Sequence record: MT586120.1
Length of the DNA: 64,000 nt
Reading direction: 5' to 3' (one strand)
The position numbers were made by a program, and so were the translations under genes. A model generated the notes under the pieces. The model ran no database searches. It saw only the letters and a list, made by a program, of their open reading frames with translations, and had not been told where the DNA came from. This document shows, one piece after another, positions 2,708 to 26,600 of the stretch. Position 1 is the stretch's first letter. Each line of letters opens with the position of its first letter.

Positions 2708-2731
2708 GCCTCCCGCAAGGGGGGCTTTTTT
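2708..2731 (+). terminator. Rho-independent terminator closing the early cluster
   Basis: GCCTCCC-GCAA-GGGGGGC followed by T6 (GNRA loop). Confidence 0.85.
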
Positions 2732-2753
2732 AATGCGTGCGTATCGACAGTAC

Positions 2754-2832
2754 TCGTTCGTGATAGGACAGTGCTATCCATTCGTTCGTGATAGGACAGT
2801 GCTATCCATTCGTGCGTTGAGGACAGTGATAT
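2754..2832. repeat. 28-bp tandem repeat (2 exact copies plus 1 degenerate)
   Basis: TCGTTCGTGATAGGACAGTGCTATCCAT at 2754-2781 and 2782-2809; degenerate TCGTGCGTTGAGGACAGTGATAT from 2810. Each exact unit holds the inverted repeat GATAG-N7-CTATC. Confidence 0.9.
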
Positions 2833-2965
2833 GGCGTTGCGGTCCATTGGGGGGTGGCGGCGTTACCTTCGTATATAAAAAGTACCTTCTATCTAAGCTA
2901 TAAAAGTAAAGATCGACCTATACTTATCGCTATTTAAAAAATTCTCCCAGATATTCCATGGACCA

Positions 2966-2998
2966 CAGAGTTGGCTCAGAGTTGGCTCAGAGTTGTCT
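2966..2998. repeat. 11-bp tandem repeat x3
   Basis: CAGAGTTGGCT CAGAGTTGGCT CAGAGTTGTCT. Confidence 0.9.
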
Positions 2999-3033
2999 CT
3001 ATATTATACCACACTTCTTAAATATCCCCCCAT

Positions 3034-3068
3034 AAAAAAATCCCCCAGGTATTCAATGCCCCTAGGAG
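3034..3068 (-). terminator. Minus-strand Rho-independent terminator
   Basis: Minus strand CTCCTAGG-N11-CCTGGGGG (8 bp with two G-U) followed by A-T7. Confidence 0.55.
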
Positions 3069-3177
3069 ATGATTATTATTATCTTGATAACATTCGCTTA
3101 TCTCTGTGTAATCCCTCTACACAGAAGTATTGCGTATATCTTCAATAAGTACTTAGAGTGTCTTATCAACCTCAACA
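3034..3177 (-). ncRNA. Candidate ~140-nt structured small RNA
   Basis: Bounded by a consensus sigma70 promoter (3183-3211, minus) and a terminator (3034-3068). Internal 8-bp stem TCTGTGTA/TACACAGA (3103-3125) and long-range TTGATAA/TTATCAA (3084-3090/3163-3169). The only ATG gives a 4-codon ORF. Confidence 0.5.
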
Positions 3178-3182
3178 AGGCT

Positions 3183-3211
3183 ATTCTACAAGTATCTCCG
3201 TGTGTTGTCAA
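3183..3211 (-). promoter_or_regulatory. Sigma70-type promoter, minus strand
   Basis: TTGACA-17 nt-TAGAAT with TG extension on the reverse complement. Confidence 0.75.
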
Positions 3212-3537
3212 GCCCCCATCAAGAGTATCCCTTTAAGTATCTCAACCATCCCCTGACAAACTGCACAAGGCTATTTAGAGAGTCATAAAAGAAGTATTTT
3301 CATTGAGATGCCGTAGGCACACACCGTAGGTGTGTTAGTAGAGATACTTAGAGAAACATAGAGAATCTTTGAGAAACATAGAGGACCGCAGAGAGCGCGA
3401 AAAATCCCCCTCTCAAGTTATCTCCGAAGAGAGTATTACAGAGAGGGTTATACTATTACTAAGGAATACCCATATACTCTACAACTCACTCCGAAGGGTA
3501 TAGAAGAGCTTAGTGGTCAGGGGGGAAATATGCTGTG

Positions 3538-3545
3538 TATAAATA
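3538..3545 (+). promoter_or_regulatory. T4-type late promoter with no adjacent ORF
   Basis: Perfect TATAAATA. Confidence 0.55.
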
Positions 3546-3782
3546 GAAGTGGAATACAAGCCTAGGAGCGTCTCTAATAGGCTCTCATCCTACGGGGGAT
3601 AGAGACACTCCGAGTTCCATTGAGGCTCCCCACAAAGGCATTTAGAGTACGTAGAAGAACATATAGTATCGTAGAGGTCCATAGAGGTCCTCTTTTTTTA
3701 TGGGCGAACCCTTTTTATGACCCTAGGGGGCAAGCCCCCACAATGAGGACCCATAAATACCAATAGAGAATATTAACTTATT

Positions 3783-4496
3783 ATGGCAGTTAACATAAGC
3801 GGTAATGGAGCTATTGAGGGTATTACTTCTTTTAATGGGGAGGATATTGCTTCTTTTAATGAGGGAGGTCCTACTTTCCGCAATATACTCTTTAATGGTT
3901 GGGTGAACACCAGTATTGGAATAAACCAACGTGGCAAAACAATAGCTCAAGTTTCTAATGGGGAATATTGGGCTGATAGGTGGCAACGTGTTTCATCCAC
4001 AACTATGACCCAGAAGGTTGAAGGGGGTAACTATATACCAAATAGGACATATACGTTATCTGGTAATAATGTAACAACAACACAAATCACATCCCCTGCT
4101 AGTGGAACTTGGGATTGGGGTACTGTGCCCTCCAATGCGTCATTGGTTCAGTTGGAGCTAGGTGATACTGCATCTTCTTTTGAATATAGACCCTATGGGT
4201 TGGAAGTAATTTTGTGTCAGAGGTATTATGAAGTTGTTGATTGTGAATATGGTACAACCGCAGTACTTGATGCGGGGAATTCGAATAAAGCTATAAAAAA
4301 ACCTTGGATATATAAAGTTAGTAAAAGAATTATACCAACCGCTATTGTAACTGCTCAAAGTGGTGCTTATTCTACCAATGCTAGTGTGAGTGGAATACGA
4401 AGTTCTTTTTGCAATCTCAATTGGCAATGGCAACAGACATCTGGAAATTTTGATAGGACCAAGGCTGCTGTAGTTAACGTCGATGCCGAACTATAA
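3783..4496 (+). CDS. Tail-fibre tip/adhesin-like protein, paralog 1 (237 aa)
   Basis: ADRW...QLELGDTASSFEYRPYGLE..LCQRYY is a motif typical of phage tail-fibre C-terminal modules; own late promoter ATAAATA 3753-3759. Confidence 0.7.
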   Translation: MAVNISGNGAIEGITSFNGEDIASFNEGGPTFRNILFNGWVNTSIGINQRGKTIAQVSNGEYWADRWQRVSSTTMTQKVEGGNYIPNRTYTLSGNNVTTTQITSPASGTWDWGTVPSNASLVQLELGDTASSFEYRPYGLEVILCQRYYEVVDCEYGTTAVLDAGNSNKAIKKPWIYKVSKRIIPTAIVTAQSGAYSTNASVSGIRSSFCNLNWQWQQTSGNFDRTKAAVVNVDAEL

Positions 4497-4527
4497 TATA
4501 AATACTAATAGAAAATATTAACTTATT

Positions 4528-5250
4528 ATGGCAGTTAACATAAGCGGTAATGGAGCTATTGAGGGTATTACTTCTTTTAATGGGGGCGGACTTACCTTTC
4601 GTAATATACTCTATAATGGGTGGGTAAACACCAGTAATGAAATAAACCAACGTGGCAAAACAATATCCGAGGTTTCTGATGGAGACTATTGGGCTGATAG
4701 GTGGCAACGTGTTTCCTCTACGACAATGACCCAAAAAGTTGAAGAGGGTAACTATATACCAAATAGGACATATACGTTATCTGGTAATAATGTAACAACA
4801 GTGCAGGTAACATCACCTGCTAGTGGGACTTGGGATTGGGGAACTGTTCCCTCCAATGCTTCATTGGTTCAGTTAGAGTTGGGTGATACTCCATCTGCTT
4901 TTGAATATAGACCCAAGGGGTTAGAGTTGGGTTTGTGTCAGAGGTACTATCAAAATCTCAATGTTAGAATGTTGTTAGATCAGGTGAATTATTTATTTTC
5001 TTCTCGCAATTCTTATGTTAATCCAATGCGAACTGCACCATCAGTAGGTTTTACAGGTAAGTTAAAGTGGGATGATTTAATTACCGGGCAGTTAAGTTCT
5101 ACTATCTTTGATTCAGATAATGTTAATGTTTCATCTAAGGTGATTCGGGCAACACCATTTTACCTTTATGTTCAGTTGCCGGGGGTTCAGCAGAATGTCT
5201 TTAAAAGGTATCAATTTGAAGAGGCTATTACCCTTGATGCCGAACTATAA
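4528..5250 (+). CDS. Tail-fibre tip/adhesin-like protein, paralog 2 (240 aa)
   Basis: First ~140 aa nearly identical to paralog 1; own TATAAATA 4497-4504; unrelated C-terminal domain; ends DAEL. Confidence 0.7.
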   Translation: MAVNISGNGAIEGITSFNGGGLTFRNILYNGWVNTSNEINQRGKTISEVSDGDYWADRWQRVSSTTMTQKVEEGNYIPNRTYTLSGNNVTTVQVTSPASGTWDWGTVPSNASLVQLELGDTPSAFEYRPKGLELGLCQRYYQNLNVRMLLDQVNYLFSSRNSYVNPMRTAPSVGFTGKLKWDDLITGQLSSTIFDSDNVNVSSKVIRATPFYLYVQLPGVQQNVFKRYQFEEAITLDAEL

Positions 5251-5281
5251 TATAAATACCAATAGAGAATACTAACTTATT

Positions 5282-5944
5282 ATGTCAGTTAACATAAGCG
5301 GTAATGGAGCTATTGAGGGTATTACTTCCTTTAATGGAGGAGGGCTTACTTTCCGCAATATTCTTTATAATGGTTGGGTGAACACCAGTAGTGAAATCAA
5401 CCAACGTGGCAAAACAATAGCTCAAGTTTCTAATGGAAACTATTTTGCAGATCGATGGGAAAGAGTTTCATCCACAACTATGACCCAAAAAGTTGAAGAA
5501 AAAAATTATATACCAAATAGGACATATACGCTATCGGGTACTAACGTAACAACAGTGCAGGTAACATCACCTGCTAGTGGGACTTGGGATTGGGGAACTG
5601 TGCCGTCTGATGCTTCATTGGTTCAGTTAGAGTTGGGTGATACTGCATCTTCTTTTGAATATAGACCCTATGGATTGGAGTTGAGTTTGTGTCAGAGGTA
5701 CTATCAGTTTGCATATGCTAATATTAGAAGTAGTGCAGGGTATATTTTTGAAAATGCAGTAACCTGGAATACTCAAATGAGAATAAGTCCATCAATATTC
5801 ACTGGAGGTACACCCGTCAATTGTATAATTCGATATCTTGATATAGCTCCCTATGGGTGTCGTATGGAAGCAGTCAGCCAGCAACCTGATGGTACGGATA
5901 GTTATGCACTTGAGCAAATCTTGGAACTAAATGCTGAACTATGA
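5282..5944 (+). CDS. Tail-fibre tip/adhesin-like protein, paralog 3 (220 aa)
   Basis: Same N-terminal module; own TATAAATA 5251-5258; third distinct C-terminal domain; ends NAEL. Confidence 0.7.
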   Translation: MSVNISGNGAIEGITSFNGGGLTFRNILYNGWVNTSSEINQRGKTIAQVSNGNYFADRWERVSSTTMTQKVEEKNYIPNRTYTLSGTNVTTVQVTSPASGTWDWGTVPSDASLVQLELGDTASSFEYRPYGLELSLCQRYYQFAYANIRSSAGYIFENAVTWNTQMRISPSIFTGGTPVNCIIRYLDIAPYGCRMEAVSQQPDGTDSYALEQILELNAEL

Positions 5945-6030
5945 TTGGATTTATTGTAATACTATTATTCTTTCTTGGGATTATGGGTCTTATGACCTTC
6001 CTTTCCGTTTTTGGTGATTGGTTTGTATAG
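5941..6030 (+). CDS. 29-aa hydrophobic peptide (MIGFIVILLFFLGIMGLMTFLSVFGDWFV)
   Basis: ATGA overlap with the stop of paralog 3; single transmembrane-like stretch; below the ORF-track cutoff. Confidence 0.5.
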   Translation: MIGFIVILLFFLGIMGLMTFLSVFGDWFV

Positions 6031-9080: not shown

Positions 9081-12000
9081 ATGATTGGTACTGGTATTGA
9101 TGTGAGAGTGAAGATTCAAGATATTGTTTCTTCACAACTTCCCGAATTTATTTTAAGTGAAGCGCCATTAACTGATGACTTCTTAAAACAGTTTTATGTC
9201 TCCCAGGAATTTCAGGGAGGTGCAATTGATTTTGCTACAAATTTAGACCAGTACCTAGACCTAAACAACCTAAGTTCAGATTCTCTCTACGGCACATTTG
9301 AACTAACCCAAGATATATCATCCACAGATACTGAAGTATTTGTAAATACAACAAAAAGTTTCCCTGGCGAGTGGGGGCTCTTAAAGGTCAATGATGAAAT
9401 CATGACCTATACTGGTATTACAACCAATTCTTTCACTGGCGTTGTAAGGGGCTTCAGTGGAGTAACTTCACTTCATGCTGAAGGTGCTCCCGAAGAGATT
9501 GTATTTAATGCCACAGAGGCTTCTAGCCACCTCTCAGGTGCTTCTGTAACAAACCTAAGCACATTATTCCTAAAAGAATTTTATAAAAAGCTCTCATACA
9601 CATTTGCTCCTGGTTTTGAGGACCTAGATGTTGATTCTGAACTTGATGTAGGCAACTGGATTCGACAGGTTCGTTCATTCTTCCAAACAAAGGGAAGTGA
9701 GGAGTCAATCATTATTCTCTTCAAAGTTTTATATGGGGAGAAGCCAACTGTTATTGACTTGGAAGATTTCCTAATCAAGCCATCAACAGCAGAGTACTCT
9801 AGGAGAGATTATGCGGTAGCTATTCCCGTTGAAGGAAATCCAATTGACCTCAAAGGTAAAACTATCTTTCAAGTAGGCAGCCCCAATGTATTTGGTGCTG
9901 TTTCTGAGATTGAAGCATTTACTCGTGATGGGAGATTGTATTATAGGATTTATTTCTTCGTATCTAATGAAGAGGTATTGAATGAAAGAAAGCTATTCAC
10001 AATTCCTGGAAGAACTCAATGCCAGAGGGAATGGAATCCTGGTGATACAACGCTCACCGTAGATACTACTATTGGCTTCCGCGATAATGGTGAGTTCATA
10101 ACAGCGGACGGCATTGTATTCAATTACGAACAGAGGAGTGTTAATCAATTCCTAGGTGTTACTTGTTCTGTTCCAACAAAGAAAGTTCTAATTACTGATG
10201 AGATCATTGACAATATAATTGTCTCTGGTATGAATGATCTTGGGGAAGAAGTTACTTTGCGCCTAACTGGAGTTATTTCTGATATTAATTTTGGTGATGA
10301 TATTCCATTTAATTTCCAAGGTGAGAAAATTCGTGTAGATACTCTAGGTGAAAGTATTTTAAGTAATATTGCTACTAGAGACGAATCAACCGTACCAGAA
10401 ATTATTGCTAATAGCTTTGTATATAATACAAGTGTTAGATTTGAAGTGGAAAGTGTTAATGGTACTTCATTCATTTTATCAGCACCTTACTTAGACAAAT
10501 CATCTATTGATGTTGGAGATACTGTTGATATCCTTCCACGTGGTGGTCAGAATGCTTATATCATAGGTGCTCTAGTTACCGAAGTTGATTTTGTTAACTC
10601 TACCGTTACAATTAATAACTCATTCGGTATTCCAGTTAACCAGTCACTGGATATTAGGAGAAATCAAAAATATGCTAATAGTAGTGGAGCTAGAATTGAC
10701 TATGGTAACAATGCCGTACTATCAAATGTTTTGAACTTATATGATGGTAGAGAGTACGATTCAAATTACTACGTAGCAACTAATTCACTACCATCCTATG
10801 AAATCTCTGCCAATATTGTAGAGAGTTCATTAGTTAGTCCAACACAACAGAGCTTTGATGATTTTAATAGTTTCACTGGTGAGTATTCAACTATTATCTT
10901 TGCGGGTGATGTTAATTTTTATACCGGGGATTTAGTTACTTATTCCGTAAGTGAAGGAGCAACTTCATTAACTGAAACTGGGGAATATTATGTTCAAGTT
11001 CTATCTGATAGAAGAAAGGTTAAGCTTTTTGTTTCTCCATCATTTATTGGAAGTGAGAATTCAGTTGGACTTGTATATACTCCAGACTCAGGCTCACATT
11101 TCTTTACTCTAGAAAGTCAGAAGACACGTGAAATTTCAACTAAGCGTATTTTTAGAAAAATTCCTGTATCTGATAGTTTAGTTGCTATTGATAGAACTCC
11201 TGAAGAAACTACTCCTGGTTCTATCGCAGTATTGACTAATGGTGTGGAGATTGTTTCATATAAGTCTCCAAATAAAGTATACCTGGGTCCACTTGAGAGA
11301 TTAGATGTTGGATCACGTGGTGAAGGATATAGTGTAATATCTCCACCCAAAATCTACATTGCCGAACCTGATGTTCAGCTATATGAAGGTGGTACTGGTA
11401 GTGTAGTTCCTACTAAAGCTACAAGTACTCCAGTAATTAAAGGTAAGTTAGAGGAAATTCTAATTGACCCACAGGACTTTGATATTAAAGAAGTATTCAG
11501 TATCACTGTCAGGGGTGGTAATAGTCGTGGTGCATCAGCTGTTCCTATTATTGATAAAAAGAATAGGGAACTACCTTTTGATAGTAGAGTTACTACATTG
11601 GGTGGCGGTGTTAATCCTGATGATAACAGCATCCTTTTTCAGAGCAATCATAATTTAACAGAAGGAACTGCATTAGTTTATAATAACAAGGGTGCTGATA
11701 GTATTGGTATTACCCTTTCAGATAATACTGATTTTAGTACAGGTGCAACTCTTTCTAATGGTGGAGTTTATTATGCTAAAATATTAAACAATAGAACTAT
11801 TCAATTATTCGAGACTTTAGAGTCTTTGAATAATGGTGGAGATCCAGTATTTCTATCATCAAATCTAACTGGGTATGGTTTTCAGTCATTTGATACATTA
11901 AGGGCTGATAGATTGATTGGAGCAACAATCACTGATGATGGTGGAGACTTTTTCTATAGAAATATGTCCTTCAATCCATCAAATGTATTTGATGAGTATG

Positions 12001-15000
12001 ATGAAATCAGATACGTATCCCACGGATTTAATAGTGGGGATATTGTAGAGTATGGGACTACTGGAACTGTTATTAGTGGAATGTCCACACAGAATCAGTA
12101 CTATGTCTACAAAGTAAATGATAATGTACTAAAACTATCTGATGCCGGTATTGGAGCAACTATATCCAGCAACTATGATAGGTTGGAATTTGTTGACTTT
12201 AATAGTTCTGGTACAGGCACTCATAATATCAAATATCCAGACATCACAGCCGATGTTGTAGTTTCTTTTGCTAGTAGTGCAACTGGAACAATTGTAGCTA
12301 GTCCTATTATCCGTGGATCAATTGAACAAGTCTATACAGATGATGGTGGATATTATGGTAGTGATATTATTAATTTTGAAAAAAATCCAGAAGTATATCC
12401 AATTGGTGGGTCACTGGCTAAATTATCACCATCAATTGTTAATGGGATTGTTAATTTTGTTCAAATTATCAATACTGGAAAAAACTACTCTGATTGTCCT
12501 GAATTAGTTGTTAGTGATTCTAGCGGCGCTGGAACTGGTGCTAAATTAAGGGCAGTTGTTGTAGACGGCGAAATAATAGATGTTATCATAATTAGTGGTG
12601 GTATTGGTTATAATTCGGCATCTACAACTATTGAAGTCCTTGAGACTGGTAGAGATGCGCTAATTATTCCTAGAATTAGAGACCTAACAATCAATCTAAA
12701 TTCTAGATTTGGATTTGAGGTTCTTAGTCAAAATAACTATAGGATCGTATCATATAATAGAGTCCTTAGAGAAGGCGTTTATAGTGATGTTGGTAACTTC
12801 CACTCACCTATTATTGGTTGGGCTAATGATGGTAATCCAATTTATGGTGGTTTTGGTTTCTCCGACCCCCAGGATACTAACTCAGAAATCCGTGCTATGG
12901 AGACCGCATATGAATTGGCTCCCAATGATGTATATGGTAGACCTTCACAGACAGCATATCCAGCTGGTTTCTTCATTGAGGATTACAAGTATGTTGATGG
13001 TGGTGACCTAGATGAATACAATGGTCGTTACTGCCGCACACCAGACTTCCCCAATGGTGTATATGCATACTTTGCTGGAATTTCACCAGACCCACAGTCA
13101 AGTGCTAGAGAGCCACAGTTCCCATACTTCATTGGACCTAAGTTTAGGGATTCTGCAATTGATTCAAATAGTACTAATGTTGATCAGAGCTTTGATCTTA
13201 ATGATAAGCCAATCTTTAGAAATACATTCCCATACTATGTTGGGAGTCCAGTAGCTGGTAGTGAGTTCATCGATCAATCCTATCTATTTGATATTCAGGA
13301 TAGTATTGTACAATCAACTTCTCCAGGAACTATTGATTCCATTTCAATTGTTGGTGACGGAAAAGATTACTCCGTTGGTGATGTACCTTTATTTAATTCT
13401 GATGAAGATTTTATCAGTGCTACTATATCTCAGGTAACTGGTATTGGTGTATCAGAAGTTAGAGAAAATACCCTATCTTACAGTAAGTTAGATACAGCAG
13501 TAATTAGATTAGATCAGAAAACTATTCGCATATATGTTTCCCCCAATCACCAATACAATGATAACGACTCTGTTATTATTAGTGGATTAAGTACGATTAC
13601 ATCCACTATTAGTGGATCAAGAATTGTAAATATAGATAACTCAGCAATGACTCTATATTCACCAGTTCAGCCTATCGTAAATGATGGTGTTACTGATATA
13701 TTTGTAAATTCAATATCTCAAAATGTGAGTGTTGGATCTTCAATTGAAATTGGTAATCCCGGCGAAACTGAATTGGTAAGTGTATTAAATATCTTCCCAA
13801 TCAATAAGGCACTTCGTGTATATCGCCCTGTTGGGTTTAATACTGTCGCAAACATTGGTGATCTCGTATCACCATTACCAAACTTCTTTGATGTTAATGT
13901 TAGAACTCCCGAGTTTGAGTCCGAGCTTGACTATGCGTATAACTTCAATCCAAAACAATCTTTAAGTATTGCTCCATCTCTTGGAGAATCTACTAGTAGA
14001 GTTTATAGTATTGGTAGTATTGATTACCCAATATCAGTACCTGCTGCGTCAATTTATGCACCAAACCATCAATTTAAAAACTTAGAGGAAGTTGTATTTA
14101 CTAAGCCAGCTAATGGTATTAGCCTTGATGGATTGGATTCAAATAATAATCCAGTTGTTGTTCCTATCATTGGCGATAGCCAAGTGCTGTATGTTCATAA
14201 CATTTCCAAAGACTACATTGGGTTGAGATTTACTCCTAGTGACGAAGACATCATCTTCCTCACGGATGCTTCCGATCTATTCACATATTCTATAAAAACA
14301 AATAGGTTTGTTGAAACTGCAAACTTGGATAGAATTCGTGCCGAAGTCACTACTATTAAACCTCATCAACTAAAGAATAATGATACTGTTACTATTAGTG
14401 TATCTGCGTTGAATTCTTCCGGCATTGGAACTGCTTCCGATGTTTATATTCAGTTTGATGAAATTTCGCAGTCATTGATCGTTGATCCAAAATTTGCTAC
14501 ATCAGCAGATATCTCAACTGAATTGAATCTCGTCTTCATTGAAGATCACGGATATATTTTGGGAGACTATGTTTTATATGAGTGTGATGGAACTTCTATT
14601 TCTGGATTAACAACTCATTCCAAATATTTTATCATCCCATTTGATACCGATAGATTCTATCTAGCGGAAACTGCTATTGATGTTAAGATTGGATCTGAGC
14701 TTCCTATCATATTGGGTTCTACTGGTTCTGGTGAGCATAAGTTCTCCAAAGTTAATCCAGAACTCAATATTACCGGCAATCACGATATATTGTTCGATGT
14801 ATCTGATCCATCACTTTTAAATAGAGAGCTAAAGTTCTTCTACGATCAGAATCTAACAGAAGTATTTGAGAATAATGGTATTGATCCCGTATTTGTTGTT
14901 AGTGGAGTTTCTAGTGAAGGAACTATTGGAGCAACTAAAGAGATTAGATTCTCTGAAAACAATCCTGGAGTAATTTATTACGGTATTGAGTCTGGTGGAT

Positions 15001-18000
15001 ACATCTCCACATCAGATACTAATGCAATCGCATATAACTCAATTAAGTATGTTAATAGTGTATATTCTACTAAAGGAACTATCACATCAGAAGATGATAA
15101 TGTATTCTCATTATCTTTATCAGAGAAGCCCGAAGTTCCTCTATACACATCCACCAATTCCTTACTATCGTATACTACTTCATCCAAAAATACTGTTGGG
15201 GGTGTAGGTGAGGTTAGGATTATCTCTAGTGGAAATAATTTTAAGACTCTACCAGAATTTATAACAATACAAAGTGAGACTGGAAACAACGCATCATTGA
15301 GAGCAAATTCCAGTGATATTGGTAGGCTTTCATCATTCAGGATTCAGAATGCTGGATGGGCATATTCTGCAGATAAGACATTGAGTCCTAAGGGAATCGT
15401 CCAACCAAGTATTAAATTCACTAATTCTGACTTTGTATCTTCAATTGACGTTATTAATGGTGGAATTGGATATCAGGTAAATCCTGATGTTGTTCTAATT
15501 GATGCTATCACTAGACAAACCATAGATAATGGCTCATTAATTGCAAATACACAATCATCTAAGATTGTTGAAATTGAAATTGATGTTGCACCATCAGGTC
15601 TTTCAAAAAATCCTCACGAATTATACACAACTAATAATGGTAATGGTATTCCTATTCTTGAGATCATTGATATCGATTCAACCTCAGCAGAAGTAGTATT
15701 TTCCCTACAAACACCTATTATTGGTTATGCATCAACTCCATTTGAGATTGGAGACCAAGTATTCATTGAGAATATCTTCTCAGATAGTACTGATTCATCC
15801 AACTTAAATTCTAGTGATTATGGATATTCATTCTTTGATGTTGTTTCGGTAATTTCATCCAATCCAACTATTATTACCGTTAAGTATCCAGAAAGTGCGG
15901 TTGATAACATCTATACTGGTATTGGAGCAACTAATCAAGGTGCCTTCTCTTCCATTGTTAATAGGAAAAATTATCCAGAATTCCAAGTAAATCAAACTAC
16001 TGCAGTATTTGTTATTGGTGAGAGACTATCAGTTATTATTGATGGTGATGATAGAGAAACTGATTTAATTATTGAAGAATCCAATACTAATTTCTTTAAG
16101 GTCAGTGGTAATTATGACTTGCTTACAGGTGATACTGTTCGTGGAAACGTTAGTGGTATTGAAGCTACTGTAACGGATATCGACAAGAGTTTCTGTAGGT
16201 ACGTTGTAGACACTGTTAGTCGCACAAGTATTGGTTGGAGAGATTCTATTGGATTTACTAATGATGAATTTCAAGTAACACCAAATAATGATTACTATCA
16301 GAATCTTTCATATTCCATTAAGAGTACTATTGGCTTTGAGACACTTATTGGACCAGTCAATCGTCTAGTACATCCAGCTGGATTGAAAAACTTCTCGGAT
16401 ACTAAAATTGAGTCAATTGGTGTTGTTGGTCTTGGAACGACAGCTATTACAACCGACCCATCAATCACCATTGATTTCATTGGATTGACTGATGTATCAG
16501 ATACCCCATTGCGCGTTGATAGAATTAACGTATTTGATTTGGGGTATGATTCAAACGTTAACAATAACAAGACCAATGAGATCCGATTTAATAGCGCTAC
16601 ACCTGAGAAGAGGTTAACTAATTATTTTGAAGTGAAGACTAACCGAGTATTACTAATTGATGATATTAGTAGTTCATTTATTGATAGTGATAATCTAAGG
16701 GCTCAGAATGATTTTATAGACTTTGATGTTATTACTTCAGTTTATACTAGAGGTATTATTCAAGTTAGAAATCCATCTACCGATCAAGTCCAACTATCAG
16801 AAATTATATCTCTAACATATGATGATAATGCATATACGCTTAGTAAAGCTAGTGTATATGATGGAAACGTTCCGCACGGTATTTTCCAATCTACTTCATT
16901 AACTAGTAGTGATTATACATTGAGGTTTATTCCAACTGAACCAGATACATTTGATATGGATCTAAAGCTATTGACTCAAAAGTTTGATAGTAACTCTATT
17001 GGTGCAAAGGAACTTGGATATGTAACTCTTGGAGGTCTTGCTAGAACTGCACCTGCATTATCATCAACTCTTGTATATTCAGCACCAAATAATTCCATTA
17101 ATGCTGTAGCACTTCAAGTATATGTGCAGAAAGCAAGTGGTCAACCATCATACTATGAAGTATATGCATTTGTTGCTAATGGTGAAGTTTTATCAAAAAC
17201 ATACAATTTTACTGGTGATCCCATTAGAGAGTCAAACTCACCTGGATTTGACTTTATATCTATTCTAGATGGTGGTGGTAAGATTAGGATTTCTGTAGAG
17301 AACACGGATGCTGATTTCTTACGTATCAACACAAGAGAACTTGAGTATAAAGCAACTGCTTCTGGAGAAAATCCATACAGGTTCAAAAAGGATAATATCT
17401 TTGATGGTTCTGAAAGAGGATTGAATCTTCTATCCGAGCAGACTGTTGGGTCTACAACAGATTCATCCATCAATGTATTAACATTAAATAGTGAGCTATT
17501 CCAAACAGCCAAGTTGGTAGTATACATTGAGGGTACCACTATCGGTGCTATCCATCAAGTTATGGTAGCCAATTCTGATGGATCAACATACAACGAAACA
17601 TATCCATTCATTACTGAGGGTGATGGATCTGGTGGTTCGGGTATTGGTACATTTGGAGCTACTATCAATGGTAGTGACTGGAACATTGAGTTCTATCCAG
17701 ATTCCAGTTTTTCTGCGCAGTCATTGACCTTCACAACATATGCTGAAGCATTTTATCGCGAGTATGATGCAGTTAACTATGATCCAAGACCACTTACTTA
17801 CCAAAATAACGAAGAGGCATATTTCTTAGAGATATACAATACCCCTCTAGGTAATAGAACTAATAAGGTTAGTTTTCCAATTCAATATAATGGAATACCA
17901 GTATATGAAAAGGGGTTTGATCCAATTGCAGTCATTGATGATTCTAGTGATGTTATTTCATTGAATAATCATTTCTTTAGTGATTCTGAAGAATTGTATT

Positions 18001-21000
18001 ATGAGTTTGGTGATACCGTTAGTACAGTAATACCAGAGGCAATTGGAATTGTTCCTGTTATTGATTACTTGGGCATAAGTACCGACAAGATGCCTTCTAA
18101 GGTATGGGCAATTAAAATTGACTTAAATAAATTCCGAGTTTCAGCAACAAAAGAAGACGCTGATCGGGGTATTTATATCGATATCGTTGATTTTGGTGTG
18201 GGCAACAACCATAAGTTTGGTATGGAAAAGAAATTGGAGAAATCACTCTATACAATTGATGGAGTTATTCAATCCCCAATCGCACAAGCTAACTTAGTAT
18301 ATGAGTTGGATTCATCCACAACAGATAATGATAAGTTATTGCAACTAGTTGGAATATCCTCTATTACTGCTGGAGATATCTTATTAGTTGATGAAGAATA
18401 CATTATCATTGAAGATGTTGGATTTGCTGAGCAGGCTTCTGGTCCAATCTCTAATACTGGATCTATACCACTTATCGAGGTTAAGCGTGGTACTTTAGGA
18501 TCATTATCAACATCACATTCAGCAGGAGCAGAAATGTTCTTATTTAGGGGTTCGTATAATATTGTTGGAAACAACCTCATTTTTACTGAAGCACCAAATG
18601 GTAGTGGTCCACAACAACCAAACCAAAGTAACTTAGTGATTGTGAACTCATCTTTCCAAGGAAGAGTATTCTTACAGCAGAACTACGATAAGATTGCAAT
18701 TTTTGATGATATTAGTTCTGAATTTGATGGAACTACTGAGCAATTCAAATTGACTTCTGGTGGAATAACAACAGGGGGAGTTGAGAATGGTAGTGGAGTA
18801 TTGATAATCAATGATATCTATCAAACACCAACAACTACAAATAATGAGGGTAACAATTATTACTTTACTGATGCCGAAAAGAATATTGTATATTCTTGGA
18901 GTGACCTTGGCGATACTAGCCAATGTTTAGTCGGTGAAATCAGAATAAGTGATTCTGAAGATGAAATTGGTCTATCCAACATAGACTTAAATTCCATTGA
19001 TCAGGAAGCATATTTTAATACCTTAGTTGCGGGTGATGAATACGTAGTTAATGTTAAGTATAGTGAATCTCAGTTTGAGTATCGCGGTAATTATCAAGCA
19101 TCTCTACCAGGAAATACTACCAGATTTGTAGGTGGTTCTGTTATTAGTGGAATTGTAACTACAACTGATGATGTCGTTGATGTTACCATTGTACCAGTTA
19201 TTCCAAAATCAGATGTTGTATTTACCGGCATTAGATCTCCAATCACTGGACTACGTGTTGAATCTGAGTTTGATGTAAATCAAAACCAAATTCCTCGTGG
19301 TGGTCTCATCGTATCCCTCGGATCAACTCCTGGACTGGGTTATGCTCCACTAGTTGATGCTATCTTGGAACCAGAAGTTGTTGGTGGTGAGATTGTCGGT
19401 GTTTACACAGGCAATAACATTGGAGAAACTACGCAAGTTAGATGGGCTGTCTATGACAATGAAACTGGTGAGTTGACTGTTAGTTTCTATGGGAACGCCA
19501 CTACAGCCCAGGAGCCCGTCAGTGGTGCTGTTTACTTTAAGGAGAGTGGTAGGCTATTAGTTACTACACCAGCTTCTCTAAGCGGTCAGAGCATCCTTAC
19601 AGGTGATTTGGTGTCATTGGACGCATTACTATTTGAGTGTAGTTCTGGTGGAGCACCTTCACAGCAGATTTTTCCTGATCGGGACTCTGTATTTACTATT
19701 GAGTCTATTGTTAACGACAATACATTCTCAGTTTCTGTTGGAATATCCACTCTAGATCATACATACATTGCGGGTGGTACATGGCAGAAAGTCCTACCAT
19801 TTGAGTTTGGTCGCCAAGAGTTGAATCCAAGCTTTGTATATCTAAACAACCTGGAATTTGAATGTCCAAGTGGTCAGACTGCTGGTTTGACTACAACTCT
19901 ATTCCCAACAGACACCAATAACTTCCCAGTAATTACTAGGGATGATGGAGCACACTTGAGACTTCAAGTAGGTATTTCAACTCTAGTTCACAACTATGTT
20001 GGTGGCGGTACTATCGGGGAGATTACAAAGAACTCCGTTGGTTCGGGATATAACAGTGTAGTTTCTATTGGAATTACTGAAGCTGGTCATACGGGCGCGG
20101 CTGCGTCTATTCGCGGAATCCCTGGTCCTGGTGGAGAACTACAGATCGTGATTGATGATCCTGGTAGTGGATATGTTGATCCATACATCTGGGCACCATC
20201 ACCAAACTACTTCAATCTACCCATCAAAGGTATTTCACGCAGAGATGGAACAACAGACACTGGTAAAAACTTGTTTGTTACTTGTGAAGTTGGTGGAGCC
20301 ACAACCACTGCTATTGGTAAATCCGAATACTTTGAAGTTATTAATTATGAAATAAGTAACTTGGGTTATGGTTTTATGGAAGGTGATGTTGTAACTGTTG
20401 TTGGACTAGTTACTGATAAGAGTTTATCACAACCAATCGAAGAGTTTCAATTAACAGTATTGGATACATTTACTGACAATTTCTCTTACTGGAATTATGG
20501 TCAGCAAGACTATATTGATAGTATTTCATCATTGCAAGATGGAATCAGAACAAGATTCCCTCTAATCTATAATGGAGAATTATTATCCTTTGAAAAAAAT
20601 CCTTTGGATGAAGATTCTGATGCTATCGATTTAAACTCTATCCTATTAATCTATGTGAATTCTGTACTGCAAGTTCCTGAAGTTGCTTATAGGTTTAATG
20701 GAGGAACATCATTTGAATTTACAGAACCACCTTTACCTGCTGATGATATTGATATCTATTTCTATAGGGGAAATAGAGACCTTGATAGTATTGAGGTCAC
20801 AACAATAACTGAGTCAATCAGACCTGGTGATGATTTACAAATCATGAAGAATGACGTTTATGATTTAAGTAAGACCCAGGATATTAGGTTGGTGACTCAA
20901 ATCAAATCTTCAGATACTGTTAGGACTAACATCTATTCCGGCAATCGTGATTTGGATACTATAAATCCACGCCCTGTTGCTTGGGATAAGCAGAAGAGAG

Positions 21001-23639: not shown

Positions 23640-26600
23640 ATGTCTCAGATCAATCTAGATACCAGCCCATACTTTGACGATTTTGATGCTGATAAGGATT
23701 ATTATAAAGTCCTTTTTAAGCCAGGATTTCCTGTACAGGCACGTGAGTTAACTACTTTACAGTCAATCTTACAAAATCAAATTAGTACTTTTGGAGAGCA
23801 CTTCTTCAAAGAAGGTTCTATGGTGATTCCTGGTGGAATTACATACAATCCCCAATATACTGCTGTTATTCTTGAAGCGCAGCAAGGTGGTATTGACGTA
23901 TCCTTGTATCTAGATCAACTGGTTGGTAAATCAATTCGAGGTGAAGTAACAGGAGTTCGTGCTAAAGTTATTGGATATGCTCTTCCCCCACAAGATGCTA
24001 TAACAAATCCAACTATCTTTGTTACGTATACTGATAGTGGAAATGATGATACTACCGTATTTTTCACAACAAATGAGTCATTGCTATTAGATCAAGCAAT
24101 TGTATATGGAAATACTACAATTACTGCAAATAGTATTTTTGCAACTACTGTTTCTACAGATGCTACTGCGGTTGGTTCCGCTGCAGAGATTGCTGAGGGT
24201 GTATATTTCCTAAGAGGAACGTTTGTACAGGTTGCTAAATCATCTATTGTACTTGAGCCATATGTAAATACTCCATCATATAGAGTTGGTCTTCAAATTA
24301 CCGAACAGATTGTTACTGCGGGTCAAGATAATACTTTATATGATAACGCTAAAGGATTTAATAATTTCTCAGCACCTGGTGCAGATAGATTAAAAATTAC
24401 TCTCAAGTTAATTAAAAAACCTTTAAATGATTATAATGACTCAAACTTTGTTGAGTTATTGAGAGTTGATTTTGGTGAGGTTAAAAAGCTAGAAGAAAAT
24501 AGTAACTATAATATTATTAAGGAGTATATTGCTGGTAGAACTTTTGATGAATCTGGTGATTATGTAATTAATGGCTTCCAACTAACTGCCGATGACTCAT
24601 TAAATGATAATATGGGTAATGGCGGTATCTATAATGCCGAGCAGACTACTGAAGGTGGTAGCAAGCCCTCAGAAGATTTGGCTATTCTAAAAGTGTCTTC
24701 TGGTAAGGCATATGTTCGTGGTTTCGACATTAAGAACCCAGGAACTGTTAATATTGATGCGCCCAAAGCACGTACAACTGAAACCCAAACAAGTACTGGC
24801 GTTCCATTTGAAATGGGCAGTAAGTATTTTGTAAATAATGTTACTAGCACACCTGTAGTTGGATTGGATATTGCTGATAATATCATTCAACTTTATAGTG
24901 GTCGTCTAGATGACTCTAAAGAGCCTACAGGGGACTTAATTGGTGAGGCGCGTGTATATAGCTATTCTTTGGAAGATGCGCCTTATACTTCTCCTGCTAC
25001 CCCTTGGAACCTGTATCTATATGATTTCCAAATATTTACTAAAATTAACTTAAACCGAGATGTTACCAGTCTGCTGTTAGCAGGATATAGAGTTCGTGGT
25101 CTAAGTTCAGGTGCAACTGGATTTGTTAGGACAGTTTCTAGTGATAGTGCAACTCTAACTGAAGTTAGTGGTGAGTTTATTATTGGTGAAAGAATTTCTA
25201 TTAACGGTTCTAGTATCGAATCTATTTCGATTGCATCATTAACAATCAATAAGCAAAATCAAGTAAAGTCTGTAAAGCAAAACACAAGTTCATTAGACCC
25301 AAATATTGCAGTAGATTTTAGTGCGGATACTAGATTATATGCAAGAGTTGCTAGAAATTTTGCACCTAGCGATACATTTAGTATTGATACTTCAGGTTTC
25401 GTTACTTGTGCCGGAAGATCATTCGACTCATTTAAGGTTGGTGATATTGTTGTTTGGCAAGATTCTACCAATGCCACATTAGTTTACAATGAAGTATTGT
25501 TTCTACTCCCCAATGATTTGGGTATGAATGTTGGACCTGTTTCTAATGTTGCTGGTGTTGCAGCTGGCACTTTACCAACTAGTGATTTGACTGGTGTGAA
25601 TTTACGTGCAACTGAATCACGTGTTCTTAATACTGAAAATTCAGCTCTATACGTAGAGATGGAGAAGGAAAATATTGCTAAGGTAAATCTAGATTCTTCA
25701 CAACTATACTTTACTACACAGATTACTCAACAGGCTACTGTTGGATCTACACTCACTCTTAATAGAACATTGACGGGTGTAAATGATGCATTATTTACAT
25801 CATTTGATCAGGAAAGATATTCAATAGTATATAACGATGGCACAACCGAGACTATTGGATCTGAGCAAGTCTCTTTATCGGCAGATAGTACTGTTATTAC
25901 ATTCACTGGATTATCTAAGATAAATGAGATTGGAATTACTGTAAATGTAACAGCAATCAAACCTTCTATTAAATCAAAAACAAAGGTTTTACTTAAGAGC
26001 CAATTACTACTAGTTGATAAAATTAGTCCCAATCTACCAGCTGATTTTGGATTAACTTCTAATGAATTCTATGGATTGCGAGTTGATGATGAGGAAATCT
26101 CATTAAACGTTGCTGATGTTGAGTCTATCAGTGCTGTATATGAATCACTTGATGGTGGTGATCCCGTTTTAGATGTATTAGGTTTTGTTAATGGTCTATC
26201 ATTAGATGCAAATACTGTTAAAGGTGAATTGATCTTGGGTTCTGTAAGCGGAACCGTTGCTAAGATGGTAGATACTACCTCACCCTCAAATGTTAGGATT
26301 GTATATTTCGGTCAATCCCGTTTTGAGGTTGGGGAGGAAGTTATTTTCTCTGAGTCAAACATAAAGACAAATTTGCAGGTAGTGCAGCCAGGTAATTATA
26401 ATGATATTACCTCAAAATATACATTAGATAAGGGTCAAAGAGAGCAGTTCTACGACTTCTCCAGATTGATTAGAAATGGAAATGCAGCAGCTCCAAATAA
26501 AAAGCTATTGATTGTATTCGATCAGTTTGGAGTACCTGCTGATGATAATGGTGATTTCTATACAGCAAACTCATATGTAGAGGAAATCTTTGCTACTGGT

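What the first reader, a model, noticed from the sequence alone, without database searches (positions are those of the whole stretch)
3753..5944. Triplicated tail-tip cassette: constant N-module, three unrelated C-terminal domains, conserved flanks
Three ~750-bp units each carry their own late promoter and UTR. They are nearly identical up to TGTCAGAGGTA(T/C)TAT (LCQRYY), then unalignable for 75-95 aa (4230-4481, 4951-5235, 5705-5929), then reconverge on (D/N)AEL-stop; GATGCCGAACTATAATATAAATAC is exact at the ends of units 1 and 2. Homology on both sides of a hypervariable domain suits cassette swapping, expansion or contraction by recombination. All three can be co-expressed, suggesting a polyvalent, exchangeable receptor-binding repertoire encoded as stand-alone small genes away from the main fibre genes. 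Unit 1 also has a 24-nt internal duplication (EDIASFNE).
Basis: partly seen in the sequence, partly recalled or inferred. Interest (0 to 1): 0.7.

Follow-up and report, generated by a model that had tools for sequence, protein, structure and literature searches.

The report
Tandem hypervariable phage spike genes
A marine cyanobacterial virus (Synechococcus phage S-CAM7) carries three side-by-side copies of a small tail-fibre/spike gene. The attachment half is kept nearly identical by recombination, while the outer half is hypervariable, a compact and natural example of how phages diversify the proteins that probably recognise their hosts.

Summary
The window is Synechococcus phage S-CAM7 (MT586120.1). 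Three tandem genes (3783-4496, 4528-5250, 5282-5944) share an N-terminal part that is 87-88% identical in protein up to LCQRYY, then diverge for 79-99 aa, and end in (D/N)AEL.

- **C-terminal parts are related, not unrelated.** They are hypervariable versions of one beta-sandwich. A family profile built without their relatives still finds all three, the predicted folds superpose, and MRxxP and the terminal AEL are family-wide motifs.
- **Family and solved relative.** The proteins belong to a very large tail-fibre C-terminal family (PHROG 4492; 1861 representative clusters). A family profile matches a solved structure, the trimeric GP13 vertex spike of the non-tailed vibriophage NO16, which plugs into the virion through its first 20 residues.
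- **Recombination is supported.** There are gene-conversion patches within the N modules. Each C type has closer relatives in other phages than in its neighbouring units. Six C types sit on near-identical N modules.
- **Unit number varies.** I found 1 unit in S-CAM7-like contigs, 2 in others, and 3 in all S-CAM7 isolates.
- **Variation between isolates** is concentrated in the C parts.

Virion location, co-expression and receptor binding remain inferred. I rate this a new variant of a known kind, of moderate interest.

The parts
3753..3760 (+). Late-promoter-like motif of unit 1 (7 of 8 matches to TATAAATA), 30 nt before the ATG
   Evidence: Sequence. It sits in the same register as the motifs of units 2 and 3 in the DNA alignment.
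3783..4496 (+). Unit 1 gene (237 aa). Residues 1-30 form the anchor-like N-terminus, including an 8-aa insertion. Residues 31-149 form sandwich 1 plus the linker helix (LCQRYY). Residues 150-237 form the hypervariable sandwich 2 (nt 4230-4493).
   Evidence: ORF; PHROG 4492 E 5.9e-47; AF2 model pLDDT 85.6; fold match to the unit 3 model, TM 0.82.
3840..3863 (+). 24-nt insertion in unit 1 (8 aa) that partly repeats the adjacent SFNG-coding stretch and lengthens the anchor segment
   Evidence: Gap of 8 residues / 24 nt in units 2 and 3.
4482..4505 (+). Junction 1: the last codons of unit 1 (DAEL), the stop codon and TATAAATA. It is identical to junction 2.
   Evidence: Sequence; motif scan.
4528..5250 (+). 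Unit 2 gene (240 aa). The hypervariable C part is nt 4951-5247.
   Evidence: ORF; PHROG 4492 E 7.3e-52; AF2 model pLDDT 83.2; fold matches.
5236..5259 (+). Junction 2: the end of unit 2, the stop codon and TATAAATA
   Evidence: Sequence; motif scan.
5282..5944 (+). Unit 3 gene (220 aa). The hypervariable C part is nt 5705-5941. This is the most variable unit between S-CAM7 isolates (C part 68% identical).
   Evidence: ORF; PHROG 4492 E 1e-44; isolate comparison.
5941..6030 (+). Unannotated 29-aa hydrophobic ORF whose ATG overlaps the stop codon of unit 3. It may be translationally coupled. Whether it belongs to the system is unknown.
   Evidence: Conserved in L003/L006 with conservative changes, and identical in L002, L010 and L007.

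Best explanation
The three units are paralogous late genes for small, stand-alone, probably trimeric receptor-binding spikes (minimal tail-fibre tips).

Each protein has three sections:
- a conserved N-terminal segment of about 20-30 residues that would act as a plug or stalk anchoring the trimer to a socket on the virion;
- a conserved first beta-sandwich (carbohydrate-binding-module-like in the solved relative), followed by a short helix carrying LCQRYY;
- a second beta-sandwich whose framework (MRxxP, terminal AEL strand) is kept while its other stretches are hypervariable. I infer that this part contacts variable host-surface structures.

Because all three share the same anchor, I infer that they compete for, or share, one kind of docking site, most plausibly on the baseplate whose genes follow directly. 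That would give the virion a mixed recognition repertoire.

The array evolves by homologous recombination. Conversion patches keep the anchor/N modules alike. C parts belong to old lineages that are shared with other cyanophages. Unit number changes among relatives.

Shown here: gene structure, family membership, fold prediction, selection pattern, recombination signatures, copy-number variation.

Inferred: trimer state, anchoring mode and site, late co-expression, receptor binding.
For: **Family.** PHROG 4492 'tail fiber protein', matching the C-terminal 345 profile positions. There are 1861 representative clusters, and the domain lies at the C-terminal end of proteins of about 100-1135 aa. 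BFVD fold hits are tail fibres of cyanophages and of Vibrio, Burkholderia, Xanthomonas and Agrobacterium phages.

**Solved relative.** The profile of alignment A3 hits PDB 9t9r chain H, 'Spike (GP13)', 235 aa, at E 2.8e-8. Both the N part and the CxR(Y/F)...MxxPP part align. The NO16 preprint (10.1101/2025.11.28.690173) describes GP13 as follows:
- it is a trimer found in the virion;
- residues 3-20 form the anchoring stalk;
- two beta-sandwiches are joined by a small helix;
- a CBM cleft sits in the N-terminal sandwich.

The AF2 models of units 1 and 2 show the same order: a low-confidence N-terminus, sandwich, helix, sandwich.

**Selection.** N modules have dS 0.42-0.48, dN 0.06-0.07 and omega about 0.15 in every pair, so all three genes are maintained.

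**Hypervariability.**
- Family conservation falls from 0.6-0.8 to 0.06-0.4 after residue 141.
- The N parts of 128 members form 1 BLAST cluster; the C parts form 85.
- Between S-CAM7 isolates the C parts are 100%, 92% and 68% identical, while the N parts are about 99-100% identical.

**Recombination.**
- Odd-one-out sites in the N modules fall in 30 runs against 56.8 expected; 0 of 20000 permutations reached this.
- The C part of unit 2 is 51% identical to P0010, whose N part is only 59% identical. Units 1, 2 and 3 have N parts 87-88% alike and C parts undetectable by BLAST.
- Six C types sit on N modules that are 77-94% identical.

**Copy number.** 1, 2 or 3 units in relatives.

**Promoter motifs.** 11 of the 12 TATAAATA in the window lie on the + strand, which carries the structural genes. 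One lies about 29 nt before the annotated gp25 start, close to the 30-31 nt spacing seen for the units.
Against: - No direct evidence that the proteins are in S-CAM7 virions, are trimers, or bind cells.
- The link to NO16 GP13 is at profile level only. Single sequences found no PDB match.
- The Foldseek search of the PDB library did not return 9t9r. Its best hits were weak: a phi297 tailspike domain at E 3e-3 and H-type lectins.
- In GP13 the proposed sugar cleft lies in the N-terminal sandwich, which is the conserved part here. The variable sandwich may therefore not be the (only) binding surface.
- pLDDT in the C part is moderate (56-90).
- The excess of non-synonymous changes between isolates rests on small counts (28.5 against 4.5; 10.2 against 1.8). 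It could also reflect imported alleles and not positive selection.
- The single-unit contig L007 could be an assembly chimera across a 43-nt identical stretch.
Confidence: 0.62

Rival explanations
1. The products are spikes or decorations attached elsewhere on the virion (neck or collar, capsid vertices, or the tips of longer fibres) and not to the baseplate. They would act in first, reversible contact, for example with pili or surface glycans.
For: - The solved relative sits on a capsid vertex.
- In other cyanomyoviruses, family members lie just upstream of the terminase gene and not next to baseplate genes (L008, L043).
- In longer relatives the same domain ends long fibres.
- S-CAM7 virions show the highest pilus association of the three phages tested (10.1101/2025.09.20.677514). 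No protein was assigned to that binding.
Against: - In S-CAM7 and its close relatives the units directly precede gp25 and gp6.
- No other ORF in the window carries a similar anchor or domain.
- Gene position is weak evidence either way.
Confidence: 0.2
2. Only the conserved N-terminal sandwich binds the receptor, a conserved glycan. The variable second sandwich would then be a rapidly drifting or decoy surface, for example varied to escape recognition by host defence sensors, and would not determine receptor specificity.
For: - The GP13 cleft is in the N-terminal sandwich.
- Some BFVD and family relatives carry CenC-like carbohydrate-binding annotations.
- The N module is under strong purifying selection.
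Against: - The framework residues and the terminal strand of the C part are conserved family-wide.
- C types persist as recognisable lineages across phages whose N parts are only 53-62% identical.
- Isolate differences are mostly non-synonymous and patchy.
- This is the pattern of a functional, selected surface and not of free drift.
Confidence: 0.12
3. One unit is the working gene, and the others are silent donor cassettes or decaying duplicates.
For: Tandem copies with a conserved 5' part resemble donor-cassette systems. One contig (L007) carries a single fused unit.
Against: - Each unit has its own start codon, promoter-like motif and intact frame.
- Omega is about 0.15 in all pairs.
- All three units are kept in three isolates from two sites.
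- There are no stops or frameshifts.
Confidence: 0.04
4. The hypervariability is made by a dedicated mutagenic element (a diversity-generating retroelement) or by a site-specific inversion switch.
For: Variation is sharply localised at the C-terminus of a receptor-binding-type protein, as in DGR targets and in the Mu/P1 fibre switches.
Against: - Each C part occurs once per S-CAM7 genome, with no second (template) copy at E up to 0.01.
- All units are direct repeats on one strand, with no inverted repeats flanking them.
- No family member or repeat of these segments lies elsewhere in the window.
Confidence: 0.02

Closest known systems
GP13 vertex spike of the non-tailed vibriophage NO16 (PDB 9t9r; bioRxiv 10.1101/2025.11.28.690173)
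   Same: - Similar size (235 aa against 220-240 aa) and stand-alone format.
- Profile-level sequence homology (E 2.8e-8), including the N-terminal NxLxN...INQ...Y.D.W block and the CxR(Y/F) helix followed by MxxPP.
- The same predicted domain order: short N-terminal stalk, beta-sandwich, small helix, beta-sandwich.
   Different: - The host virus belongs to a different realm (double-jelly-roll capsid, no tail), and GP13 docks on a penton base.
- GP13 is a single gene there, not a tandem array.
- No hypervariability has been reported for it.
- The S-CAM7 docking partner is unknown.
- Foldseek against the PDB library did not return this entry.
C-terminal domain of cyanophage and other phage 'tail fiber proteins' (PHROG 4492; e.g. 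the 763-aa tail fiber of Synechococcus phage ACG-2014f)
   Same: Clear sequence and fold homology: about 50% identity over the N module and TM 0.72-0.73 normalised to the query.
   Different: Those proteins carry the domain at the end of a long shaft. The S-CAM7 units keep only about 20-30 residues before it and are triplicated.
T2/T6/S16-type gp38 adhesins of T-even phages (named from my own knowledge; no tool returned them)
   Same: Works alike in principle: a small stand-alone protein with a conserved attachment part and hypervariable receptor-contact segments that evolve by recombination.
   Different: No sequence or fold relation was found. gp38 is a single gene next to gp37 and binds the long-fibre tip. 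It has a polyglycine-sandwich architecture, not two beta-sandwiches.
Multi-RBP phages with several tailspike or fibre paralogs sharing a conserved N-terminal anchor (e.g. CBA120-like and Klebsiella multi-depolymerase phages; named from my own knowledge)
   Same: The same logic: a conserved anchor, exchangeable distal domains, and several receptor-binding proteins on one virion.
   Different: Those proteins are large enzymes assembled into branched complexes through dedicated adaptor domains. Here the units are minimal (about 230 aa), near-identical in two thirds of their length, and homogenised by gene conversion.

Membership tests
PHROG 4492 / GP13-like tail-fibre-tip and spike family | Significant match of the whole protein to the family profile | tested here: met
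   E 5.9e-47, 7.3e-52 and 1e-44, covering residues 1/9 to the end. A family HMM built here gives E about 1e-67 to 1e-70.
PHROG 4492 / GP13-like tail-fibre-tip and spike family | Two beta-sandwiches joined by a short helix (as solved for NO16 GP13) | tested here: met
   This is a prediction only. AF2 models of units 2 and 1 (pLDDT 83 and 86) show strands, then a helix at 130-138 / 138-146, then strands. Direct superposition on 9t9r was not obtained.
PHROG 4492 / GP13-like tail-fibre-tip and spike family | Conserved family motifs in the variable half (MRxxP, C-terminal AEL) | tested here: met
   R168 is present in 94% of rows, P171 in 93% and E239 in 93%. All three units have them.
PHROG 4492 / GP13-like tail-fibre-tip and spike family | Homotrimer with an N-terminal stalk that anchors it to the virion | not testable with these tools
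   Only monomers could be predicted. The first 20-30 residues are conserved among the units and have pLDDT of about 55 or below, which is compatible but not a test.
PHROG 4492 / GP13-like tail-fibre-tip and spike family | Structural component of the virion | not testable with these tools
   No S-CAM7 virion proteome was found in the papers searched.
T4-type late genes | TATAAATA-type late promoter shortly upstream of the start codon | tested here: met
   Exact motif 31 nt before units 2 and 3; 7 of 8 matches 30 nt before unit 1; 11 of 12 motifs in the window are on the + strand. Transcription itself was not tested.
Diversity-generating retroelement target | A template repeat similar to the variable region, plus a reverse transcriptase | tested here: not met
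   Each C part has exactly one place per S-CAM7 genome at E up to 0.01. I did not search separately for a reverse transcriptase.
Invertible tail-fibre switch (Mu Gin / P1 Cin type) | Alternative C-terminal segments in opposite orientation between inverted crossover sites, with one shared N-terminal exon | tested here: not met
   The three genes are complete, lie in direct orientation, and each has its own start codon and promoter-like motif.
T-even gp38 adhesin | Sequence or fold relation to gp38 (glycine-rich motifs framing hypervariable segments) | tested here: not met
   No Pfam family, no PDB sequence hit for single units, and no gp38 among the fold hits.

The most novel reading that the evidence does not exclude
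The three products share one anchor and one docking site and co-assemble, possibly even as mixed trimers, since the part that should trimerise is 87-88% identical. Each virion, or each burst, would then carry a mosaic of recognition surfaces. Unit number and C type would turn over quickly in nature through unequal recombination between N modules, as the unit-1/unit-3 fusion in a 99.9%-identical contig suggests. The same spike module would also be exchanged between tailed phages and non-tailed (double-jelly-roll) marine phages.
Probability: 0.2. Interest if true: 0.7.

Novelty: new variant of a known kind. Interest (0 to 1): 0.5.

Why it matters
How T4-like cyanophages recognise their hosts is poorly understood, because they lack recognisable homologues of most T4 fibre genes. 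This locus offers three things.

- **A compact, tractable candidate.** It contains three minimal spike genes whose conserved and variable parts are sharply delimited. They have a solved distant relative that suggests how such a short protein can dock.
- **A marker for host-recognition diversity.** Unit number and C type vary among otherwise near-identical genomes, so the locus can be read directly from metagenomes, especially long reads.
- **A link between phage realms.** The similarity to the NO16 vertex spike suggests that tailed and non-tailed marine phages draw on a shared pool of receptor-binding modules.

The general principle of a conserved anchor with an exchangeable distal domain is well known, so the interest is moderate and not high.

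Tried and rejected
- **Pfam:** no family for any unit, and little for longer relatives.
- **PDB by single sequence:** nothing, even at E 10. Only the family profile reached 9t9r.
- **Foldseek against PDB:** only weak partial hits, to the phi297, LKA1 and AP22 tailspike domains and to H-type lectins and discoidins (E at least 3e-3, about 100 columns). I do not build on these.
- **tRNA and Rfam scans of the locus:** nothing credible.
- **Intrinsic terminators between units:** none found.
- **IMG/VR scan with unit 2:** only distant relatives, though several have two adjacent family genes.
- **Papers mentioning S-CAM7** (coevolution, pili and Hi-C preprints): none names these genes, and the coevolution mutation tables were not available to me.
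- **Search for the run accession of contig L007:** no paper.
- **Search for another protein in the window with the same anchor or domain:** none.
- **DGR and inversion-switch models:** rejected.
- **The 'silent cassette' model:** rejected on selection and gene integrity.
Full report
**Identity of the window.**
Megablast places the window in Synechococcus phage S-CAM7 isolate 0809CC03 (MT586120.1, 100% identity; window position = record position minus 62000). This is a T4-like cyanomyovirus (Kyanoviridae, Mazuvirus) isolated on Synechococcus WH7803. The locus lies between a block of small genes of unknown function with 51% G+C and the structural module. That module begins with gp25 and gp6, followed by a 4314-aa ORF.

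**Check of the observation.**
- Three genes follow one another on the + strand: 3783-4496 (237 aa), 4528-5250 (240 aa) and 5282-5944 (220 aa). Start-to-start spacing is 745 and 754 bp.
- The N parts are 87-88% identical in protein, and nearly identical in DNA from the promoter-like motif through the first 19 codons. Similarity collapses right after LCQRYY, and all three proteins end in (D/N)AEL.
- The 24-nt string covering the last codons, the stop codon and TATAAATA is exact at 4482-4505 and 5236-5259.
- Unit 1 has an extra 24 nt (8 aa) that partly repeats its neighbour.
- TATAAATA occurs 12 times in the window, 11 of them on the + strand, which carries the structural genes. One lies about 29 nt before the annotated gp25 start. 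The unit motifs lie 30-31 nt before their ATGs.
- No terminator-like site separates the units.

**The C-terminal parts are not unrelated.**
- In an alignment of 128 family members, the C part keeps MRxxP(T/S). Arg is present in 94% of rows, Pro in 93%, and the terminal Glu of the AEL ending in 93%.
- I built a profile of the C part from 74 members only, after removing every sequence whose C part had any BLAST hit (E below 1) to a unit. It scored the three C parts at 21.0, 17.1 and 22.5 bits. The maximum among 90 shuffled controls was 8.0.
- AF2 models of unit 2 (pLDDT 83.2) and unit 1 (pLDDT 85.6) both align over their full length with the public predicted model of unit 3 (A0A7D5FVT9; TM normalised to target 0.84 and 0.82).
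- The three C parts are therefore hypervariable versions of one subdomain. The (D/N)AEL ending is a structural motif of the family and not primarily a recombination flank. Together with the overlapping promoter it still gives 24 nt of identity at two junctions.

**What the proteins are.**
- There is no Pfam family. All three match the C-terminal 345 positions of PHROG 4492, 'tail fiber protein' (E 1e-44 to 7e-52). RefSeq names them tail fiber proteins.
- The exhaustive search found 1861 representative clusters. The domain lies at the C-terminal end of proteins of about 100 to 1135 aa.
- Among the 128 aligned members, about 40 have only 11-25 residues before the domain, as here. The short stand-alone format is therefore common.
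- Fold hits among viral models are tail fibres of cyanophages (ACG-2014f, S-N03, S-B28, P-TIM68) and of Vibrio, Burkholderia, Xanthomonas and Agrobacterium phages.
- A profile of the family hits one solved structure, 9t9r chain H 'Spike (GP13)', 235 aa, at E 2.8e-8. Both halves align.
- That entry is the vertex of the non-tailed vibriophage NO16 (10.1101/2025.11.28.690173). GP13 is found in the virion and is a trimer. Residues 3-20 form a three-stranded stalk that plugs into the penton base. The body is two beta-sandwiches joined by a small helix. A carbohydrate-binding cleft is proposed in the N-terminal sandwich.
- The AF2 models show the same order. Residues 1 to about 25 have low confidence. 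A very confident first sandwich follows (pLDDT 95-98), then a helix carrying LCQRYY, then a second sandwich of moderate confidence ending in a confident terminal strand.
- Caveats: single-sequence PDB searches found nothing. The Foldseek PDB library did not return 9t9r and gave only weak partial hits.

**Selection.**
- Among the three units, the N modules have dS 0.42-0.48 and dN 0.06-0.07 (omega about 0.15). All three are therefore maintained as protein-coding genes, and the duplication or last homogenisation is not recent.
- The C parts are saturated at both kinds of site.
- Between S-CAM7 isolates (three distinct genomes from two Californian sites), differences within the three genes lie almost entirely in the C parts of unit 2 and unit 3. 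Further differences lie in the repeat-rich region upstream of the array.
- C-part identity between isolates is 100%, 92% and 68% for units 1, 2 and 3. The N parts are about 99-100% identical.
- The changes are mostly non-synonymous: 10.2 against 1.8 in unit 2, and 28.5 against 4.5 plus a 4-aa indel in unit 3. The counts are too small to separate positive selection from import of a diverged allele. The synonymous changes in a C part next to an N part with none favour some import.

**Recombination.** Three independent signals support it.
1. Within the N modules, the 82 variable sites split almost evenly among the three possible 'odd one out' patterns (29, 27, 24) and occur in runs. I counted 30 runs against 56.8 expected, and none of 20000 permutations was as low. 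This is the patchwork expected from gene conversion between units.
2. N and C parts give conflicting relationships.
   - The C part of unit 2 is 51% identical to that of P0010 and 36% to P0012, whose N parts are only 59% and 56% identical.
   - Unit 1's C part matches P0015 (31%; N 62%).
   - Unit 3's C part matches P0125 (39%; N 53%).
   - Units 1-3 have N parts 87-88% alike and C parts with no significant BLAST similarity.
   - The three C types are therefore older than the similarity of the N modules. Either the N modules were homogenised, or the C parts were imported, or both.
3. Among metagenomic proteins whose N part is 77-94% identical to the units, there are six BLAST-distinct C types. 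For example, P0007 and P0008 have N parts 94% identical and C parts with no detectable similarity.

Across the 128 members, the N parts form one BLAST cluster and the C parts form 85.

**Copy number in relatives.**
- All S-CAM7 isolates have three units.
- S-CAM7-like contigs from several assemblies (L003-L006; flanks about 74-87% identical in nucleotides) have one unit with a fourth C type between the same flanks.
- Contig L042 has a full unit of the unit-1 type followed by a 124-aa 'mini unit'. This mini unit keeps an anchor-like N-terminus and the C sandwich but lacks sandwich 1.
- Contig L043, from another cyanomyovirus, has at least two tandem family genes directly upstream of the terminase gene. 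A stop codon there overlaps TATAAATA, as in S-CAM7.
- Contig L007 (a Logan assembly, 99.9% identical to the window downstream) carries a single unit. It consists of unit 1's upstream region and first codons fused to the body of unit 3. The crossover lies in a 43-nt stretch where the two units are identical. This is either a natural deletion variant produced by recombination between units or an assembly chimera. I cannot decide between these.
- Several more distant viral contigs carry two adjacent family genes.

**Models rejected.**
- No diversity-generating retroelement: each C part occurs once per S-CAM7 genome.
- No inversion switch: the units are direct repeats with their own starts.
- No silent cassettes: the frames are intact and under purifying selection.
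- No other family member or similar anchor exists in the window, and tblastn found only three places in the genome.
- None of 50,697 cultured-phage records outside S-CAM7 has a detectable relative of any of the three C parts.

**Most likely mechanism.**
Each unit encodes a small trimeric spike. The conserved first 20-30 residues anchor it to a virion socket. The conserved sandwich and helix form the body. The variable sandwich presents a diversified surface.

Because the anchors are the same, the three products would share a docking site, probably on the baseplate encoded just downstream. That would give a mixed recognition repertoire. The array is kept coherent and reshuffled by homologous recombination.

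Trimer state, anchoring, late co-expression, virion location and receptor binding are inferences from the solved relative, gene position and motifs. They are not results obtained here.

**Literature context.**
- S-CAM7 shows the strongest pilus association among three cyanomyoviruses tested (10.1101/2025.09.20.677514).
- In coevolution experiments, host changes in galE, which is involved in LPS production, gave resistance. Phage changes fell partly in structural and tail-fibre genes, with many deletions in strain-variable regions (10.64898/2026.10.08.757702).
- Neither preprint names these genes.

**Novelty.**
The genes are already annotated as tail fibre proteins, and the anchor-plus-variable-tip principle is well known. 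The following appear undescribed in the papers I could search:
- the minimal stand-alone format arranged as a promoter-per-gene tandem array;
- the concerted evolution of the anchor module alongside ancient C types;
- the variation in unit number;
- the profile-level link to the spike of a non-tailed phage.

I rate this a new variant of a known kind, of moderate interest.

Noticed in passing
window 5941-6030 (+): An unannotated 29-aa, strongly hydrophobic ORF starts with an ATG that overlaps the TGA of unit 3 (ATGA). It is identical in the other S-CAM7 isolates and in L007. In the relatives L003 and L006, whose DNA in this stretch is about 80% identical, it is conserved with conservative substitutions. 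It is probably a real small membrane protein, possibly translationally coupled to the last unit.
   Followed up: partly
window about 2727-3752: About 1 kb has no annotated gene in MT586120 and is packed with short direct repeats:
- a 28-nt repeat, two copies, at 2754-2809;
- an 11-nt repeat, three copies, at 2966-2999;
- 10-nt-period CATAGAG-type repeats at 3335-3407 and 3648-3690.

A G+C hairpin at 3728-3741 sits just before unit 1. The same repeat type precedes the unit in contig L042. There is no tRNA or credible Rfam match. This could be a regulatory or origin-like region.
   Followed up: partly
window about 500-2700: A block of small ORFs has 51% G+C, against 36-40% in the structural module. 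It contains repeated peptide-coding stretches and differs among S-CAM7 isolates in gene content. It looks like a strain-variable island abutting the spike array.
   Followed up: no
L042 1292-1666: A 124-aa 'mini unit' follows a full unit at the same locus. It has an anchor-like N-terminus and a glycine-rich linker, followed directly by the C sandwich (MRxxP, DAEL end), without the first sandwich.
   Followed up: no
L043 1-835, and L008 6001-6675: In other cyanomyoviruses, family members sit directly upstream of the terminase gene. L043 has at least two in tandem, with the stop codon overlapping TATAAATA. The array design therefore recurs at a second genomic position.
   Followed up: partly
L007 950-1100 (Logan SRR12470689 contig): A contig 99.9% identical to the window has one unit that fuses unit 1's upstream region and first codons to unit 3's body. 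It is either a natural two-unit deletion or an assembly chimera. The origin of the sequencing run is unknown.
   Followed up: partly
window 9081-22025 and 23640-30827 (+): Two giant structural ORFs (4314 aa and 2395 aa) lie downstream of gp6. The homologue of the first in relatives carries a YHYH domain hit. Either could provide the docking site for the small spikes.
   Followed up: no
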